A DNA stretch of 63,760 nucleotides, counting the filler, from Octopus bimaculoides (taxonomy: Eukaryota): the NCBI RefSeq assembly GCF_001194135.2. It is 7 parts of 7 records of this genome, joined end to end, with 100 filler letters (N's around TTAATTAATTAA, not from the genome) between each part and the next. Parts side by side here need not be neighbours in the genome. Positions count along the whole stretch, not along the records: positions 57,981 to 62,354 come from NC_068996.1; 6 more parts are not named here. One strand, 5' to 3'. Shown in pieces: positions 57,981 to 63,760 of this stretch. The first letter of the stretch is position 1, and each line of letters starts with the position of its first letter. The notes beneath the pieces are model-generated. The model was not told where the DNA came from and searched no databases. It saw only the letters and a program-made list of their open reading frames with translations. A program made the translations under genes and the position numbers.

Positions 57981-58507
57981 TATTAGCGCTTGCATCTATT
58001 CTAGTAGACTCTCCAGATTTAATTTTTCTTGAGAGGATTTGTCTCTTTTTATAATATTATTGAGTGTGTAGGGGTGGAGAGAGAGATATAGGATACTAAA
58101 AGAGGGTGACGAATGGGGAGAAAGTGAGAGAGAGTGTGTGTTTCTGTTTTTGTGTATGTGTGTGTGCCTCTGTATCTGAAAGGAGTGTCAATGGGAAAGA
58201 GAAGGAAAGAAAGAAGGAAGAGAGAAAGAAGAAAGAAAATTGTGTTTACAGCTGGTCAGTTCTTTCACTCTTCATTCTTTCTTTCCTTCTCTTTCCCATT
58301 GACACTCCTTTCAGATACAGAGGCACACACACATACACAAAAACACACACACACTCTCTCTCACTTTCTCCCCATTTGTCACCCTCTTTTACTATCCTAT
58401 ATCTCTCTCTCCACCCCTACACACTCAATAATACTATAAAAAGAGACAAATCCTCTCAAGAAAAATTAAATCTGGAGAGTCTACTAGAATAGATGCAAGC
58501 GCTAATA
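57981..58507. repeat. About 250-bp near-perfect inverted repeat (fold-back)
   Basis: 57981-58230 is the reverse complement of 58260-58507 with roughly 7 differences and a 29-nt spacer. Confidence 0.95.
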
Positions 58508-58577
58508 TATGATTTTTAAAAACAGGTGACATATTAGTAAATGTACAACCATCCAGATCTCTGAGTACCTTATTATT

Positions 58578-58628
<51 letters not shown>

Positions 58629-58629
<1 letters not shown>

Positions 58630-58698
58630 GAATAAAGAGAAAATGGAGAGATAATTAGTAAAATTTTATCAATTACCTTTCCATTTTCTCTTTATTCT
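58629..58698. repeat. 70-nt hairpin with a perfect 19-bp outer stem
   Basis: agaataaagagaaaatgga / tccattttctctttattct. Confidence 0.8.
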
Positions 58699-58699
58699 T

Positions 58700-59870
58700 T
58701 GTCATATATTTTGCGATGGTTTTCTGTATTGCGTTCAGAAATTGTAGATATGGTGTTTACATCCATTATCGAACCTCTGGCAGCATATTTAATATCAGGC
58801 GCTTTGCTGCAAAAACAAAAGTATTTACCTCTATCATAAGAGACCTTTTGTATGCAGATGATTGTGATTTAGTAGCGCACACAGAGATTGATATGCAACA
58901 CATTTTGAATGCATTCTCTGATGCTTGCACTGCCTTAGGAATGACAGTCAATCTCAAGAAAACCACTGTCATGTACCATCCTGCCCCTGGTAAGCAGTAT
59001 ATTGAACCAAATATCTATGTGTATGGTAGAAGACTTGGTGTAGTCGATCAGTTTGTCTACCTGGAAAGCACTGTTAATAGATACGGCAATTTGGACAATG
59101 AAATTCCATACAGAATTAGGAAAGCAAGTGATGCTTTCGGAAGGCTAGAAAGGCGTCTCTGGGCTCGGCGAGACATATGCAGGAAGACAAAGATAAAGGT
59201 GTACAAGGCGTGAGTACTCTCTTCTCTTCTTTATTCCTGCGAGACCTGAGTCACATATCATTACCACCTTAAACAACTGGAACATTTCCATCAGATGTGT
59301 CTCAGACGGATCTATGGCATTAAGTGGGAGGACCGCATCAGTGATCTTGAGATATTGGAAAACTCTCGGTGTGAAAGTTTAGAAGCTCTTGTGTTGAAGC
59401 AAAGGCTCAGATGGAGTGGTCATCTGGTCAGGATGAAAGATTCAAGGATGCCAAAACAACTCTTTTATGAAGAGTTAGCTAAAGGAGAATGACCTCCACA
59501 TAAGCCAACAAAGAGGTATAAAGGCTTGCTGAAGGTTTCCTTGAGAGATGCTAGCATCTCTCCTGACACATGGGAGGGCATAGCTATTGACCGTAGCAGG
59601 TGGAGAAGGATTGTGCATGAGGGGAAAGCTACTTTTGAGAAACCTTGAGTTGCGCATGAGAAAGTAAGGAGGGATGTCAGGAAGGACATCGTTGTTGCAC
59701 TTCCAGACAGTAAGGGTCTTCCTATGACGCTGACATGCAGTGTCTGTGCAAGACACTGCCCCAGTAAAGTTGGTCTCAAGTGTCATCTTCATATTCATAT
59801 CTGTGAAGCATGTGGAAGGGAGTGTGATTTGGCGGGAGGACTTAAACGGGATGCAAAGGTACATGAAGCC
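58700..59870 (+). mobile_element. 5'-truncated RTE-clade LINE (RT C-terminal half plus C2H2-like tail)
   Basis: IRDLLYADDCDLVAH, VNLKKTTVM, RIRKASDAFGRL, RLRWSGHLVRM..SRMPKQLFY.EL and DRSRWR; several in-frame stops. Confidence 0.9.
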
Positions 59871-60121
59871 AATTACAACAACAGCCAGCTATTGCCAGTA
59901 AAGGTTTTAGCTGCCAATTCCGTATATATGTATATATATGTGGATATGTATATGTGTATATACACATATACATATATGTGTATATATATATGTATATATA
60001 TATGTATATGTATATATATGTNNNNNNNNNNNNNNNNNNNNNNNNNNNNNNNNNNNNNNNNNNNNNNNNNNNNNNNNNNNNNNNNNNNNNNNNNNNNNNN
60101 NNNNNNNNNNNNNNNNNNNNN

Positions 60122-60596
60122 ATTTATTTCCTTGGTAAAGCCGTGTACTTTGTTCATTCCTGTCAGGTATTTTAACCAGAAGTTGGGGATCTTGTCATGC
60201 CTAGGTGCCTTCCAGTTGCTTAGTCTTTGCAGTGCCTGGCTGACCTCTTCAGTTGTTATAGGGAAGCAGAGTTGCTCAGGTGCTAAGTTCGTTGTTTTAA
60301 TAGTCCATTCTGAGGTTGCTCCTTCACCGACCATATTTCTTTCCAAAATTCTTCCACTTCTTCTGCTGTTGGTGCTGCAGTAATGTCTATTTTATTTTTT
60401 CCCAGTTCTTGGTAGAATTTTTGGGGGTTGGATTTGAACTGTTTGTTTTGTTCAAAGAAACGTTGGCATTTCTCATACCAGCGGATCCTTTGTGCTTTGG
60501 CAAGGATATCTTGCTTTAGCTTTTCTTTTGCCTCAGGTAAATCTTTTTCTGTAATGTTGTATTTGTAGAATATTTTTGTTTTCTTCTTGTTACTTA
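60122..60596 (-). mobile_element. R4/Dong-type LINE fragment (pre-RT region)
   Basis: KLKQDILAKAQRIRWYEK..RFFEQNKQFKSNPQKFYQEL and NWKAPRHDKIPNFWLKYL. Starts in a (TAA)n tract about 80 bp from the 60676 acceptor. Confidence 0.8.
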
Positions 60597-60675
60597 TTAT
60601 TATTATTATTATTATTATCATTATTATTATTATTATTATCATCATTATTATTGTTAATTTTTCTATATTTTGCAG

Positions 60676-62286
60676 AGACCCGAATCGGAATTGCGGTTTG
60701 ACAATAGGGCAGCACAAGGAGAGCCATCAAATAGAATAGCCGAAACTATGATTGAGAACAGTCGGAATTTCCCCTCTTCTGGAAATACTGCATTTCTCGT
60801 GCCTTCCATTTCAGCCACTCCAATGCCACCATCATTGACATCATTTTCTCAGTCACAGTCTATGACAGCACCCCTTCTTACAACATCATCTATCGATGGA
60901 GCCCTGTCCTATTCAGACAACAAACACCACCCTTACCCTCCGATACCTCTTAGACAAAGAGACTTACCAGCTTCCTTTTGGCAGGAGCCAAACTCACAAA
61001 CCAGGCAACGCTGTCTTGACCACTTAGCAGCAGCTGCTGCTGGACTATCTCATACCTCTCTCCAATCTCGTTCTTCCACACTTTCAGGATCTTCTCAATT
61101 AGCATCAAATTCTTTCCTGTCTTCATCTCCAATGTCTTCCAGTAACTCTCATTTCCTCCCCTTCCTTGCACTCTATCCAGATCTTATGTTGTCCAACACT
61201 GCTTTTAATCGTTATGTGCGCCGACCCTCTCAGCTGAATCCAGCAGGAGATCTTGCATCATCAACTCCCTTGAATAGACTCAAGGGTGGAACTTTAAACA
61301 GTAGCATTGGTGATGCTGTCCAACAGAATGGAAGATTAAATCCATACAGTGCTCAAAGGACTCAGTCACGTTTCCCAATTACAGAATATCTTTACAATAT
61401 GTACGGTTCTAAATATCGCTATGCAAACCCTGTTGTTTTACAACAAACTCCACCACTTTCTGAGAAAACCTGGGATGATGTACGTATCAAAATGATTGAA
61501 GCTAATAGCAGGAGTAATACTCACCACTCCACTGAAGCCAATGAGAAGTTAAACTCTAATAAAAACTCTAAACATGACGACATAGTAAACAACCCTATTA
61601 ACAGCCAAATATATTTGAAACGGAGGGCTTCTGATAACCACATCAAGTCATTGGATGACAGCGTTCTGCCATTATTGTCTTTGCAGTCATTGCAAACTTC
61701 ATCCTCCTCTTCCTCTCCAACTGATAAAAATGCTACTATTAAAACAGCTGGCACTGCTCTCTCTGAGAGAGCTGCTGACTTTAGTTTGCGGCTGTCAGAC
61801 TGTTATAAATCATCAACCAAACATTCGCCCCATTCTCGCCTTTCTGATGGCATGCTCTTTGATAATTCTGTAAATGACAGTGACCAGCTGAACAATGCTC
61901 GATGCGTCTGCTGTGATGTTCTGAAAGATTCCTGTCCAAATCAACCGAAAAGAAACAACAGTAACAGCCTTAGCCAGACCAATAATGGAACATCTGTGAG
62001 CACAGCCACAAATGACAATGCTACTCTTGCTACCACTAATAATTCCTCAAATCCTGGTGAACTTGGCTTTCTTCCATATTTCCAGGTTTTCCCCCACCTG
62101 TGGCCACCATTTCCTCCCCCTCTACCTCCTTCAGCAAGTCTATCTTTAGCAGCAACAGCTACAGCCAGGGAAAGATATCTTCCAGATAATATATATGCCT
62201 ACAGTAATCAAGAACGTAGCATCCGTTTAATGAGGCCCAGAAGCACTCTAGGAGCTCGCTACCATCCATTTGGTGATGTTCGTTAA
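60676..62286 (+). CDS. Terminal coding exon of a putative TEAD/Scalloped cofactor (FAM181/PERCC1/YAP-type omega-loop protein), otherwise low-complexity and probably disordered
   Basis: 536 uninterrupted sense codons of non-repetitive sequence ending in TAA at 62284-62286. Preceded by a pyrimidine-rich acceptor (ttttctatattttgcag|AGA, phase 0). Contains PLRQRDLPASFWQEP. First in-frame ATG inside the exon is at 60748. Confidence 0.85.
   Translation, partial: RPESELRFDNRAAQGEPSNRIAETMIENSRNFPSSGNTAFLVPSISATPMPPSLTSFSQSQSMTAPLLTTSSIDGALSYSDNKHHPYPPIPLRQRDLPASFWQEPNSQTRQRCLDHLAAAAAGLSHTSLQSRSSTLSGSSQLASNSFLSSSPMSSSNSHFLPFLALYPDLMLSNTAFNRYVRRPSQLNPAGDLASSTPLNRLKGGTLNSSIGDAVQQNGRLNPYSAQRTQSRFPITEYLYNMYGSKYRYANPVVLQQTPPLSEKTWDDVRIKMIEANSRSNTHHSTEANEKLNSNKNSKHDDIVNNPINSQIYLKRRASDNHIKSLDDSVLPLLSLQSLQTSSSSSSPTDKNATIKTAGTALSERAADFSLRLSDCYKSSTKHSPHSRLSDGMLFDNSVNDSDQLNNARCVCCDVLKDSCPNQPKRNNSNSLSQTNNGTSVSTATNDNATLATTNNSSNPGELGFLPYFQVFPHLWPPFPPPLPPSASLSLAATATARERYLPDNIYAYSNQERSIRLMRPRSTLGARYHPFGDVR
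60946..60990 (+). other. TEAD-binding omega-loop motif (PLRQRDLPASFWQEP)
   Basis: Aligns without gaps to YAP PMRLRKLPDSFFKPP and FAM181A PMRKRQLPASFWEEP (both recalled). The equivalents of YAP M86, R89, L91, P92, S94, F95, F96 and P99 are conserved or conservatively substituted. Confidence 0.8.
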
Positions 62287-63760
62287 GACAAATTATATTT
62301 ATAAGATAACAAATCGATATATGTGTGTAGGTGTGTGTTTGTGTGGTTGCCTCTNNNNNNNNNNNNNNNNNNNNNNNNNNNNNNNNNNNNNNNNNNNNTT
62401 AATTAATTAANNNNNNNNNNNNNNNNNNNNNNNNNNNNNNNNNNNNNNNNNNNNATATATATATACACGCGCAAGCGTGTGTCTCTCTTTGTGCTTGTTC
62501 TGCACCTGCACCATTACTTGATAACCGGTGTTCGTTTATTTACAAACACATAATTTATCAGTTAGGCAAAAGAGAACGATAGAATAAGCACCAAATTTAG
62601 AAAAAAATAACACCAAGTATTGGAGTCGATTTGTTTGAGTACATTTTTAAAGGTGGTGCATCAGCATGGCCGCAGTCCAACGACCGAAACTCGATAAATG
62701 ACAAAAGATAAAAGATAAAAGCTGATATTTCAATAACAGGATCATTAACTGGAACGAAAGTTTGATAAGCTTTTCTAAAAAAAAATTTTACCATTATTTC
62801 TTTAGACTGGCATCGTATTGCTTCGTCAGTTCTTCCCTGTCACCACCGCAGAACGCTATCTTATAAAACCACCACACGGCATTGTCACACGAGGTCAGAC
62901 GCAATTGTGTCGTTGACTTTTCTCAATAAAAATCCATTCCTGCGGGAAGTACATAGACAGATTCCAATTATTGAGTTCCACTGTTTGCAGAGCCATCGTC
63001 TTATCTTTCATGACGCATCATCTATTCTCGTGTTGGACACTTCACACGTTTTTAGTTAAAATCTCGTGGGAAAACATTTAATCTGACGTGAGGTCACGCC
63101 TTGTCCACGAGACTGTTGCAAGTTTTTGCAAGTTTGCCCTGCACGCATTAGAGTTTCGTTTTCTCTTGTTTTCATAGAAGAGGAACATTAAGCCAACATG
63201 GAAGAAATATCATACAAAGAAAACATTGTAATGAAAAAAGGAAAAAAAAAAAACGAAAGTAAATGAGTGAATGAATAAAAAACAAAAAAGAAAGAGCCAG
63301 GAAAATACACCCCAAAAAACAAACGAAAAAAACAAATCAAAGATCTGAAGGAGTGTCTAGAATGAAAGAAGGTTATCAAAGACTCTGTGCACTATAGCGT
63401 AGTATGATGTATTTGGCAGACGTACATTAATATAAATTGCCTTAAAGGTTAAAAAATAGACAACTACCGCTTAAACGCAAATTCTGGGTTAAAAATGCGA
63501 CTGTTTCCAAATAGGTATTGAGTATTTAACATAGATTAGCAGCAGCAGAAGCAGCAGTAGTAACAGCAGCATATTGTGGTTGAGTTGATAGTGAGAGTAC
63601 ATATGTAAATACAAGTAAGAGTAACAATATATTTGTATGTATATACATCAGACACAACAATATAAATACATATATATATACTCTATACTAAAGGCACAAG
63701 CCTGAAGTTTTAGGGGAGGGAGACTAGTCGATCACATCGACCCCAGTGCGTAACTGTTAC

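What the first reader, a model, noticed from the sequence alone, without database searches (positions are those of the whole stretch)
60676..62286. Putative cephalopod TEAD/Scalloped cofactor with a FAM181/PERCC1-type omega-loop but no recognisable YAP or VGLL domains
Seen: the only long host ORF carries PLRQRDLPASFWQEP (60946-60990). Established: YAP/TAZ, FAM181A/B, PERCC1 and Vestigial/VGLL2 bind TEAD through an omega-loop of form [ML]xxRxLPxSF[FW]xxP, and the W-x-E-P ending is the FAM181/PERCC1 flavour. No WW domain, Tondu motif or FAM181 N-terminal helix is visible in this exon, and the other roughly 500 residues resemble nothing I recognise. Inference: this is a lineage-specific Hippo-pathway competitor or co-activator that may use the omega-loop alone.
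Basis: partly seen in the sequence, partly recalled or inferred. Interest (0 to 1): 0.78.

Follow-up and report, generated by a model that had tools for sequence, protein, structure and literature searches.

The report
Octopus FAM181-like TEAD-docking disordered protein
This is the main coding exon of an uncharacterised octopus gene whose disordered protein carries a textbook TEAD-binding "omega-loop"; it is probably a stripped-down relative of the known FAM181 TEAD cofactors, not a wholly new invention.

Summary
Window 60676-62286 (+) is the large last exon of Octopus bimaculoides LOC128249600 (XP_052829528.1, "uncharacterized", 541 aa). PLRQRDLPASFWQEP lies exactly at 60946-60990. It passes Pfam's TEADIR3 omega-loop model (28.8 bits, cut-off 26) and matches every determinant position of the YAP/FAM181A loop.

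The gene is under purifying selection (omega 0.19 against Argonauta). The 37-codon island holding the loop has 14 synonymous and 0 non-synonymous changes. The protein is otherwise predicted disordered. It has no WW domain, Tondu motif, LxxLF helix, LATS site or FAM181 N-terminal helix, and no N-terminal helix is encoded in 53-71 kb of the orthologous octopod loci.

The loop is 15/16 identical to a family of about 280-aa proteins on invertebrate-host metagenome contigs. It is 14/16 identical to a bona fide invertebrate FAM181. All of these also end in the same RYHP[F/Y] C-terminal tail.

Best reading: a divergent FAM181-superfamily protein that docks on Scalloped/TEAD through interface 3 only, as FAM181A does.

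Caveat: its nearest non-octopod homologues (taxon unknown) keep the other conserved islands but have lost the loop's critical Arg and Ser.

Verdict: new variant of a known kind, modest interest.

The parts
60651..60675 (+). Polypyrimidine tract and AG splice acceptor of the last intron. The first coding exon (ATGGTTGTTGTAGCG|GT = MVVVA) is not in this piece.
   Evidence: The sequence reads ...ttctatattttgcag|AGA. The same acceptor is present in O. vulgaris and Argonauta. Their MVVVA exon lies 49.6 kb and 31.6 kb upstream of the big exon.
60676..62286 (+). Terminal coding exon of O. bimaculoides LOC128249600 (residues 6-541 plus the TAA stop). The protein is predicted to be intrinsically disordered.
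   Evidence: 100% identical to XP_052829528.1. dN/dS is 0.19 against Argonauta and 0.07 against O. vulgaris. AlphaFold2 mean pLDDT is 35, with 507 of 541 residues below 50.
60748..60750 (+). Internal ATG (Met30). It is the start of the older single-exon gene model and aligns with Met1 of the distant homologues.
   Evidence: P0006 (512 aa) starts here. P0003 and P0004 start at the aligned position, with an in-frame stop and a splice acceptor just upstream.
60943..60990 (+). Omega-loop (TEAD interface 3), IPLRQRDLPASFWQEP, residues 95-110. Mapping to human YAP: I95=V84, P96=P85, L97=M86, R98=R87, R100=R89, L102=L91, P103=P92, S105=S94, F106=F95, W107=F96, P110=P99.
   Evidence: Pfam TEADIR3 28.8 bits against a cut-off of 26. 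FAM181A peptide 6l9f_C is the best PDB hit. hhalign to vertebrate FAM181A gives 89% probability, E 2e-6, over the loop only. Residue roles come from PMC7784741. Identity to the annelid-like proteins is 15/16 and to L022 is 14/16.
60991..61056 (+). Post-loop conserved segment NSQTRQRCLDHLAAAAAGLSHT. It is the only confidently predicted helix (residues 112-126). FWQEPN..TR..CLDHLAAAAAG is invariant even in the homologues that lost the loop's Arg and Ser.
   Evidence: Alignments A1 and A6. pLDDT reaches 56-72 only for residues 101-130. No non-synonymous change in the island.
61366..61455 (+). Island 2, a Tyr-rich conserved motif SRFPITEYLYNMYGSKYRYANPVVLQQTPP (residues 236-265). Partner unknown.
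   Evidence: The stretch PIT.YLYNMYGSKYRYANPV is invariant in all six cephalopod-type sequences. dN/dS is 0.03. It is detectable at the DNA level against L001 and L002.
62221..62283 (+). Island 3, the C-terminal tail IRLMRPRSTLGARYHPFGDVR (residues 521-541). RYHPF lies at 62257-62271.
   Evidence: dN/dS is 0.03. RYHP[FY] occurs 19 times in 331,560 six-frame residues of all fetched loci, against 0.3 expected. Every occurrence is in the last 5-11 residues of an omega-loop/FWQEP ORF, including the FAM181 protein of L022 and the annelid-like family. BLASTP of the tail against L022 gives E 0.061.

Best explanation
Window 60676-62286 is the large last exon of Octopus bimaculoides LOC128249600. It encodes almost all of a 541-aa intrinsically disordered protein built from short conserved motifs separated by fast-evolving Ser/Asn-rich spacer.

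Shown here:
- It is a real gene under purifying selection.
- Residues 95-110 form a canonical interface-3 omega-loop. Every position known to matter in YAP or FAM181A is satisfied.
- There is no interface-1 or interface-2 element, WW domain, Tondu motif, LATS site or FAM181 N-terminal region.
- The same loop plus the same RYHP[F/Y] C-terminal tail occur in a bona fide invertebrate FAM181 and in a family of about 280-aa proteins from invertebrate-host metagenomes.

Inferred:
- The protein is a divergent member of the FAM181 superfamily that has lost, or never had, the N-terminal helix and the LxxLF helix.
- It docks on the YAP-binding domain of octopus Scalloped/TEAD through the omega-loop alone, as FAM181A does. 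It would occupy the pocket used by Yorkie and Vestigial and so compete with them.
- The post-loop helix, the Tyr-rich island and the RYHPF tail recruit other, unknown partners to TEAD-bound chromatin.
- The full loop is the ancestral state, because it is present in octopods and in both outgroup families. The P0003/P0004/P0007 lineage lost it secondarily.
For: Gene reality:
- 100% match to XP_052829528.1. Orthologues exist in O. vulgaris (3 amino-acid differences) and Argonauta (73% identity).
- Conserved two-exon structure.
- dN/dS is 0.19 overall and 0-0.03 in the three islands.

Loop:
- TEADIR3 scores 28.8 bits (Argonauta 29.8). This is the same range as FAM181A (34-35), L022 (30) and the annelid-like proteins (32).
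- The best PDB hit is the FAM181A peptide crystallised with TEAD.
- Arg89 and Ser94 are each worth more than 3 kcal/mol. Pro85, Pro92 and Pro99 are near-universal. Met86 to Leu and Phe96 to Trp are tolerated (PMC7784741). All of these are satisfied here.
- Precedent for interface-3-only binding: FAM181A (PMC10146773).

Family link:
- The L022 ORF has the FAM181 N-terminal region (HMM E 1.7e-23; hhalign 99.1%). It also has LQQLF, IPLRDRSLPASFWQEPN and a ...SRYHPFAGVH* end.
- Loop identity is 15/16 to the annelid-like proteins and 14/16 to L022.
- RYHP[FY] is found only at the C-termini of these ORFs: 19 observed against 0.3 expected.
- The loci were retrieved by loop patterns only, independent of the tail.

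Absent elements:
- Pfam finds only TEADIR3 at E<=10.
- No LxxLF, HFxRA, WW, PPxY, HxRxxS or HRKY in any orthologue.
- FAM181A Nt-F, mid and C-terminal HMMs find nothing in the six-frame translations of the piece or of the 53-kb and 71-kb octopod loci.

Context: the Hippo core pathway is reported present in O. bimaculoides (PMC10164948).
Against: - There is no binding or expression data of any kind.
- FAM181A/B bind TEAD, but no effect on TEAD transcription has been demonstrated (PMC12672301). So 'competitor or co-activator' remains open even for the closest known proteins.
- The nearest non-octopod homologues keep FWQEPN, the helix, island 2 and the tail. They have lost the equivalents of Pro85, Arg87, Arg89 and Ser94, and they fail TEADIR3. 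The constraint on the island is therefore not solely due to TEAD binding.
- Within octopods alone, ten identical loop residues are only weakly significant against 77% background identity.
- The FAM181-defining N-terminal region is absent.
- Unbiased HMM tests of the tail were not significant. The cephalopod-tail HMM ranks the L022 C-terminus first, but at E 0.41; the annelid-tail HMM does not find the octopus tail.
- The taxa of L005-L023 and of P0003/4/7 are unknown.
Confidence: 0.55

Rival explanations
1. The conserved core of this protein family (FWQEPN plus helix, the Tyr-rich island and the RYHPF tail) works independently of TEAD. The omega-loop in octopods is a vestige of FAM181 ancestry that is dispensable, or used only weakly.
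For: P0003, P0004 and P0007 retain all three islands and the overall gene structure. They lack the positions equivalent to Arg87, Arg89 and Ser94, and they fail TEADIR3 even at E<=10. No transcriptional effect is known for FAM181A/B.
Against: The loop is 15/16 identical between octopus and the annelid-like proteins, in otherwise unalignable disordered sequence. It shows 0 non-synonymous changes. A vestige would not be frozen like this.
Confidence: 0.2
2. It is an ordinary FAM181 orthologue whose N-terminal helix (and perhaps its LxxLF helix) sits in an unannotated upstream exon.
For: The loop and tail are shared with a canonical FAM181 (L022). The intron upstream of this exon is 30-50 kb long. 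Published FAM181 members exist in molluscs (PMC9710580).
Against: Six-frame HMM scans of the whole Argonauta (53 kb) and O. vulgaris (71 kb) loci, including 10-kb flanks, found no Nt-F match (best E about 1). The tiny MVVVA first exon with its GT donor is conserved between the two genera. In L001, L002 and the annelid-like loci the CDS starts just after the acceptor, and in L001 an in-frame stop precedes it.
Confidence: 0.1
3. It is a PERCC1 orthologue. PERCC1 is the other TEADIR3 family reported from molluscs and annelids.
For: The FW-x-EP loop flavour. PERCC1 homologues are reported in molluscs and annelids (PMC9710580).
Against: No LxxLF interface-2 helix, which PERCC1 is described as having. 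The loop lies near the N-terminus rather than in the C-terminal third. The tail links it to a protein with the FAM181 N-terminal region instead. No verified PERCC1 sequence or model was available, so this is weakly tested.
Confidence: 0.05
4. The motif is a chance match in a low-complexity ORF, or the ORF is not a gene.
For: A bare regex match is expected about 0.4 times per proteome of this composition.
Against: Annotated orthologues exist in three octopods. dN/dS is 0.07-0.19 and 0 in the island. The Pfam score is above the gathering threshold. The same 16-mer occurs in unrelated invertebrate loci.
Confidence: 0.01

Closest known systems
FAM181A (vertebrate; PDB 6l9f and 6SEN in complex with TEAD)
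   Same: Omega-loop of the P-[LM]-R-x-R-x-L-P-A-S-F-W-x-E-P type, 11/16 identical. It is the best PDB and hhalign match. It binds TEAD at interface 3 only, with no recognisable interface-2 helix (PMC10146773; PMC9710580). Otherwise largely unstructured.
   Different: FAM181A has the invariant N-terminal region (LLNFVNLAS.DIKAALDK...HRKYLQKQLKRF) and a KPIPTKP...FNVFGY C-terminus. The octopus protein has neither. The octopus protein has its own post-loop helix and Tyr-rich island, and it is nearly twice as long.
Invertebrate FAM181 represented by L022 (GenBank WGS contig JAAUXW010110392.1; organism unknown)
   Same: IPLRDRSLPASFWQEPN is 14/16 identical, including the FWQEPN ending. The C-terminus ...LWRP...SRYHPFAGVH* compares with ...LMRP...ARYHPFGDVR*.
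   Different: L022 has the canonical FAM181 N-terminal region (E 1.7e-23) and an LQQLF motif upstream of the loop. The octopus protein lacks both. CLDHLAAAAAG and island 2 are not seen in L022.
Annelid-like 250-320-aa proteins of loci L005-L021 and L023 (host DNA in JGI host-associated metagenomes; undescribed as far as I could find)
   Same: The same N-terminal-helix-less architecture. The CDS starts just after a splice acceptor. The omega-loop is 15/16 identical. The C-terminus ends in RYHPY*.
   Different: Roughly half the length. Their middle motifs (FNFDV, FVRHFAHLSPW, EELAASAAVVAAYLRWR) are not alignable with the octopus islands.
PERCC1
   Same: A TEADIR3-type loop with an FW-x-EP ending. 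A disordered, poorly annotated protein predicted to bind TEAD (PMC9710580).
   Different: PERCC1 is described as having an N-terminal helix homologous to that of FAM181, an LxxLF interface-2 helix and its own C-terminal box. None of these was found here.
YAP/Yorkie and Vestigial/VGLL2
   Same: They use the same omega-loop pocket of TEAD. The key Arg, Leu-Pro, Ser and Phe positions are shared.
   Different: YAP/Yki have an interface-2 LxxLF helix, WW domains and LATS HxRxxS sites. Vg/VGLL2 have the Tondu helix. All are absent here. Loop identity to human YAP is only 8/16.

Membership tests
Pfam PF15238 TEADIR3 (omega-loop, TEAD-interacting region 3) | Score at or above the curated gathering threshold (26 bits) over the full 16-position model | tested here: met
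   28.8 bits, model positions 1-16, E 1.3e-6. Argonauta scores 29.8. The family is also on record for this protein in the precomputed annotation.
Omega-loop TEAD binders (structural and functional class) | Residues equivalent to YAP Pro85, Met86 (Leu or Phe allowed), Arg87, Arg89, Leu91, Pro92, Ser94, Phe95, Phe96 (Trp allowed) and Pro99 | tested here: met
   I95-P96-L97-R98-Q-R100-D-L102-P103-A-S105-F106-W107-Q-E-P110. Criteria come from PMC7784741.
Omega-loop TEAD binders (structural and functional class) | Physical binding to the TEAD/Scalloped YAP-binding domain | not testable with these tools
   No complex prediction was possible: structure prediction accepts only window or search-derived single chains. 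No wet-lab data exist.
FAM181 (as defined in PMC9710580) | Conserved N-terminal region (Nt-F; core ...LLNFVN.AS.DI...HRKYLQKQ...) | tested here: not met
   hhalign aligns only the loop. There is no HRKY motif. The Nt-F HMM finds nothing in six-frame translations of the piece or of the 53-kb and 71-kb octopod loci, yet it scores E 1.7e-23 on the positive control L022. Caveat: the HMM was built from vertebrate FAM181A.
FAM181 (as defined in PMC9710580) | Interface-3 omega-loop | tested here: met
FAM181 (as defined in PMC9710580) | Interface-2 LxxLF helix upstream of the loop (FAM181B-type; not significant in FAM181A) | tested here: not met
   No LxxLF or [LIVM]xx[LH]F in any of six orthologues. 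AlphaFold predicts no confident helix N-terminal to the loop.
FAM181 (invertebrate form seen in L022; not a published criterion) | C-terminal ...[LM][WM]RP...RYHPF-x(4)-stop tail | tested here: met
   BLASTP of the tail gives E 0.061. The RYHP[FY] positional test gives 19 observed against 0.3 expected, always C-terminal. HMM tests were not significant.
PERCC1 | N-terminal helix (Nt-P), contiguous interface 2+3, and the C-terminal conserved box | tested here: inconclusive
   Interface 3 is present and LxxLF is absent. Pfam holds no PERCC1-specific model: only TEADIR3 hit a sequence I recalled from memory. No verified PERCC1 sequence was available.
YAP/TAZ/Yorkie | WW domain(s), LxxLF interface 2, LATS HxRxxS sites | tested here: not met
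   Pfam finds no WW at E<=10. The regexes for W-x(19-24)-W-x-x-P, LxxLF and HxRxx[ST] are all empty.
Vestigial/VGLL | Tondu (Vg_Tdu) motif | tested here: not met
   No Pfam Vg_Tdu hit at E<=10. No HFxRA motif.

The most novel reading that the evidence does not exclude
Lophotrochozoans may carry a previously undescribed FAM181-related subfamily that lacks the family's N-terminal helix. It would be defined by a near-frozen PLRxRxLPASFWQEPN omega-loop plus an RYHP[F/Y] C-terminal tail. The tail, which is also present in a canonical invertebrate FAM181, would be the family's unrecognised effector motif. The cephalopod branch added its own helix and Tyr-rich island. One sub-lineage (P0003/4/7) then dropped TEAD docking while keeping everything else. 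That sub-lineage would be a natural separation-of-function allele, showing that the protein has a TEAD-independent role.
Probability: 0.3. Interest if true: 0.5.

Novelty: new variant of a known kind. Interest (0 to 1): 0.35.

Why it matters
TEAD/Scalloped output depends on which cofactor occupies its interface-3 pocket. FAM181 proteins are the least understood occupants: they bind, but no function has been assigned.

An octopus protein that keeps only the loop and a conserved C-terminal tail points to the parts of the FAM181 superfamily that selection actually maintains. So do its annelid-like counterparts and the sister lineage that lost the loop. Together they offer natural positive and negative peptides for binding tests.

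For cephalopod biology it adds one candidate modulator of Hippo/TEAD transcription. It does not overturn anything, because the motif class, the binding mode and the family are already known.

Tried and rejected
1. Full HMMER profile search of 1.84 billion representatives with the four-sequence alignment returned only the family itself (P0002, P0003).
2. A concatenated-islands alignment search returned '3 candidates, none scored'. The result is uninformative and is probably a limitation of the word index with short queries.
3. A search with human FAM181A, written from memory and validated by a 97%-identity, 100%-coverage hit named FAM181A, found 898 hits. Only the top 120 were listed and all were vertebrate, so no invertebrate FAM181 came from that route.
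4. hhalign and PDB profile searches found nothing beyond the loop.
5. AlphaFold2 on the six-sequence alignment gave a disordered model (pLDDT 35). I did not run fold search because it would be meaningless on such a model.
6. The taxon of P0003/4/7 and of the metagenome loci could not be established:
   - the accession literature search was empty;
   - cluster look-ups gave no names;
   - blastn and tblastn of flanks and a repeat ORF against octopod loci showed only the coding islands.
7. Tail HMMs were not significant. I rely instead on the positional regex test and say so.
8. Resemblances considered and dropped as non-collinear or unsupported:
   - the Vg/VGLL2 N-terminal 'SCLDVMY' motif;
   - FAM181B 'SLQSRS';
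   - a Tondu-like reading of ELRFDNRAA;
   - an interface-2-like reading of CLDHLAAA.
9. Weak second 'omega' hits in L014, L017 and L019 (MRYRQVPKSSWNEP) were judged spurious.
Full report
WHAT IS THERE

The piece (57981-62354) holds one long ORF, 60670-62286 on the + strand. A polypyrimidine tract and AG end at 60675, so the exon begins at 60676 (AGA, Arg). The stop TAA is at 62284-62286.

The exon is 100% identical to residues 6-541 of Octopus bimaculoides XP_052829528.1, 'uncharacterized protein LOC128249600'. The missing five residues (MVVVA) come from a tiny first coding exon, ATGGTTGTTGTAGCG|GT. That exon is conserved in O. vulgaris and Argonauta hians, where it lies 49.6 kb and 31.6 kb upstream. 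It is not in this piece. An older single-exon model starts at Met30 (60748).

IS IT REAL AND CONSTRAINED?

Orthologues exist in O. vulgaris (3 amino-acid differences) and Argonauta hians (73% identity). Nei-Gojobori estimates for this exon are as follows.

| Comparison or region | dS | dN | dN/dS |
|---|---|---|---|
| O. vulgaris, whole exon | 0.035 | 0.002 | 0.07 |
| Argonauta, whole exon | 0.72 | 0.134 | 0.19 |

Three islands are far more constrained (against Argonauta):
- The 37 codons from the loop through ...CLDHLAAAAAGLSHT have 14 synonymous and 0 non-synonymous differences.
- The Tyr-rich island at 61366-61455 has omega 0.03.
- The C-terminal 21 codons have omega 0.03.

AlphaFold2 on the family alignment gives mean pLDDT 35, with 507 of 541 residues below 50. 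The only region above 50 is residues 101-130, with a helix at 112-126 directly after the loop. The protein is therefore intrinsically disordered and made of short linear motifs.

IS THE MOTIF AN OMEGA-LOOP?

Pfam-A returns a single family at E<=10: PF15238 TEADIR3, 'Omega loop, TEAD interacting region 3'. It scores 28.8 bits against a cut-off of 26, over model positions 1-16. For comparison:

| Protein | TEADIR3 bits |
|---|---|
| O. bimaculoides (this exon) | 28.8 |
| Argonauta | 29.8 |
| Vertebrate FAM181A | 34-35 |
| Invertebrate comparators (below) | 30-32.6 |

Against PDB sequences the best hit is the FAM181A peptide of 6l9f (QVPMRKRQLPASFWEEP, E 3.5e-4), followed by YAP.

Mesrouze et al. 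(PMC7784741) give the determinants:
- Arg89 and Ser94 are each worth more than 3 kcal/mol and are invariant.
- Pro85, Pro92 and Pro99 are near-universal.
- Met86 may be Leu or Phe.
- Phe96 may be Trp, as in FAM181A.
- Arg87 stacks on residue 96.

The octopus sequence I95-P96-L97-R98-Q-R100-D-L102-P103-A-S105-F106-W107-Q-E-P110 satisfies every one of these.

A bare regex match would be expected about 0.4 times per proteome of this composition, so the regex alone is weak evidence. The profile score and the conservation are not weak.

WHAT IS ABSENT

None of the six cephalopod-type sequences has an LxxLF or Tondu-like helix, a WW signature, PPxY, LATS HxRxxS, or the FAM181 'HRKY' core.

Profile-profile comparison with a 16-species vertebrate FAM181A alignment matches 23 columns, the loop only (89% probability, E 2e-6). 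I built HMMs of the FAM181A N-terminal, middle and C-terminal regions. I ran them on six-frame translations of the piece and of the whole Argonauta (53 kb) and O. vulgaris (71 kb) loci. They find nothing (best E 0.4-1), while the loop HMM finds the exon at about 1e-6. A hidden N-terminal-helix exon is therefore unlikely.

RELATIVES

The family is tiny in the databases. The word-indexed search found four clusters. A full HMMER profile search of 1.84 billion representatives found only P0002 and P0003.

P0003 (ENA metagenome assembly), P0004 and P0007 (Logan assemblies) are about 34% identical to the octopus protein. They share the gene structure: an acceptor just upstream of the ATG in both loci, with an in-frame stop before the ATG seen in L001. 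They keep three motifs invariant:
- FWQEPN..TR..CLDHLAAAAAG
- PIT.YLYNMYGSKYRYANPV
- RPR.....RYHPF

Their loop region reads HFSPVPLTTTFWQEP or HFSPVPLPSMFWQEP. In the ungapped DNA-supported alignment the hydrophobic positions (86 = Phe, 91 = Leu, 95 = Phe, 96 = Trp) remain, but Pro85, Arg87, Arg89 and Ser94 are gone. They fail TEADIR3 even at E<=10. Their taxon could not be determined.

THE DECISIVE COMPARISON

A scan of metagenome contigs with loop-derived patterns ([AST][SMT]FWQEPN, CLDHLAAA) returned 19 loci.

Eighteen loci (L005-L021, L023) encode proteins of about 250-320 aa. From the IMG accession series I believe these are gutless marine oligochaete symbiosis metagenomes; this is from memory and unverified. 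In the nine loci with complete ORFs that I checked, the protein starts just after a splice acceptor. These proteins contain ...LPSPSTPLRQRRLPASFWQEPNVPRR... and most of them end ...RYHPY*.

One locus, L022 (GenBank WGS contig JAAUXW010110392.1, organism unknown), encodes a protein with four features:
- a canonical FAM181 N-terminal region, VKSLLNFVNSATSDIRATLDRTASCKRTVDHRKYLQKQLQRF (Nt-F HMM E 1.7e-23; hhalign 99.1% to FAM181A);
- an LQQLF motif;
- IPLRDRSLPASFWQEPN;
- a C-terminus ...SLWRPIPTKTFSSLPSRYHPFAGVH*.

The octopus loop is 15/16 identical to the annelid-like consensus and 14/16 identical to L022. It is 11/16 identical to human FAM181A and 8/16 to human YAP. The octopus C-terminus...RLMRPRSTLGARYHPFGDVR*, matches L022's tail (BLASTP second HSP, E 0.061, both at the extreme C-terminus).

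RYHP[FY] occurs 19 times in the 331,560 six-frame residues of every locus fetched, against 0.3 expected. Every occurrence lies in the last 5-11 residues of an ORF carrying the omega-loop or its FWQEP remnant. Because the loci were retrieved through the loop alone, the tail is an independent shared character.

Unbiased HMM searches with the tail were not significant. The cephalopod-tail HMM ranks L022's C-terminus first of 2,664 segments, but at E 0.41. I therefore treat the tail homology as strongly suggested by position, not proven by score.

INTERPRETATION

The loop plus the tail tie the octopus protein to the FAM181 superfamily. It lacks that family's defining N-terminal region and any interface-2 helix, as do the annelid-like proteins.

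The full loop is present in octopods and in both more distant groups. The incomplete loop of P0003/4/7 is therefore most parsimoniously a secondary loss, not evidence that the octopod loop is a chance gain.

The mechanism I consider most likely is docking on the YAP-binding domain of Scalloped/TEAD through interface 3 only. This is the mode reported for FAM181A (PMC10146773), and it would compete with Yorkie and Vestigial for that pocket. The post-loop helix, island 2 and the RYHPF tail would act as handles for other partners. The Hippo core pathway is reported present in O. bimaculoides (PMC10164948).

All of the binding, the competition and the effector role is inference. Even for FAM181A/B no transcriptional effect has been shown (PMC12672301). 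The loop-less sister lineage shows that much of the constraint on this protein is TEAD-independent.

COMPARISON WITH THE KNOWN, AND NOVELTY

Sanchez-Pulido et al. (PMC9710580) already place FAM181 and PERCC1 members in molluscs and annelids. They define FAM181 by its N-terminal region plus interfaces 2 and 3. Pfam's TEADIR3 model is on record for this octopus protein in the precomputed database annotation.

The motif class, the binding mode and the superfamily are therefore known. Three things appear not to have been described:
- the architecture without the N-terminal helix, shared with the annelid-like proteins;
- the RYHP[F/Y] tail as a conserved feature linking them to a canonical FAM181;
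- the cephalopod-specific islands and the natural loop-loss lineage.

I rate it a new variant of a known kind, with interest 0.35.

Noticed in passing
window 57981-58507: A near-palindromic structure of about 527 bp. The outer arms are 57981-58164 and 58324-58507 (184 nt, 95% complementary). A nested pair lies at 58117-58230 and 58260-58373 (114 nt, 91%). It is rich in GA/GT low-complexity sequence. It could be a foldback element or an assembly artefact at the edge of the piece.
   Followed up: partly
window 58716-59700 (+): A degenerate non-LTR retrotransposon fragment. The ORF at 58716-59213 hits RVT_1 at 26.2 bits, below the 29.6 cut-off (YADDCDLVAH...). It is followed by frame breaks and a C2H2-like CSVCARHCPSKVGLKCHLHIH. 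It looks like a dead LINE copy in the intron.
   Followed up: partly
window 58585-58629, 59917-60021, 60022-60121, 60595-60650: (TA)n and (TA/TG)n microsatellites flank a 100-N assembly gap. An (ATT)n run lies immediately upstream of the splice acceptor. The minus-strand ORF 60283-60717 (...FWKEIWS...) runs through the (ATT)n run and overlaps the exon start. By eye it looks like the 5' part of a LINE ORF, but Pfam gave no support.
   Followed up: partly
L001 1299-2804; L002 79-1593 (P0003, P0004, P0007): The closest non-octopod homologues (taxon unknown, AT-rich genomic contigs) keep FWQEPN, the helix, island 2 and the RYHPF tail. They have replaced the loop's Pro85, Arg87, Arg89 and Ser94 equivalents (HFSPVPL[TP][TS][TM]FWQEP). 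This looks like a natural loss of the TEAD-docking determinants.
   Followed up: partly
L005-L021, L023 (e.g. L011 1719-2552, L013 2824-3594): A family of proteins of about 250-320 aa on host-associated metagenome contigs. They carry an invariant P.P.TPLR.RRLPASFWQEPNVPRR, further conserved boxes (FNFDV, R..HLSPW, ELA.SAAV.AAYLRWRA), and in most members an RYHPY* end. They have no FAM181 N-terminal region. I found no description of such a family in the literature searched.
   Followed up: partly
L022 173-2032: A canonical invertebrate FAM181 with the N-terminal region, LQQLF and the omega-loop. Its C-terminus combines the vertebrate-like 'RPIPTK' with the RYHPF tail. This suggests the tail is an ancestral FAM181 feature that vertebrate FAM181A replaced with ...FNVFGY.
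   Followed up: partly
L005 (both strands): The 1.7-kb contig carries the omega-loop ORF fragment on both strands. It is probably an inverted duplication or a palindromic assembly artefact.
   Followed up: no
L001 5279-5581: An ORF with '...LFNGISTFVDYLMPK...PFPKGIYPKVNVIVSLEFELTYFEATVQHF'. From memory this resembles a repeat seen in many invertebrate genomes. It has no counterpart in the octopod loci.
   Followed up: partly
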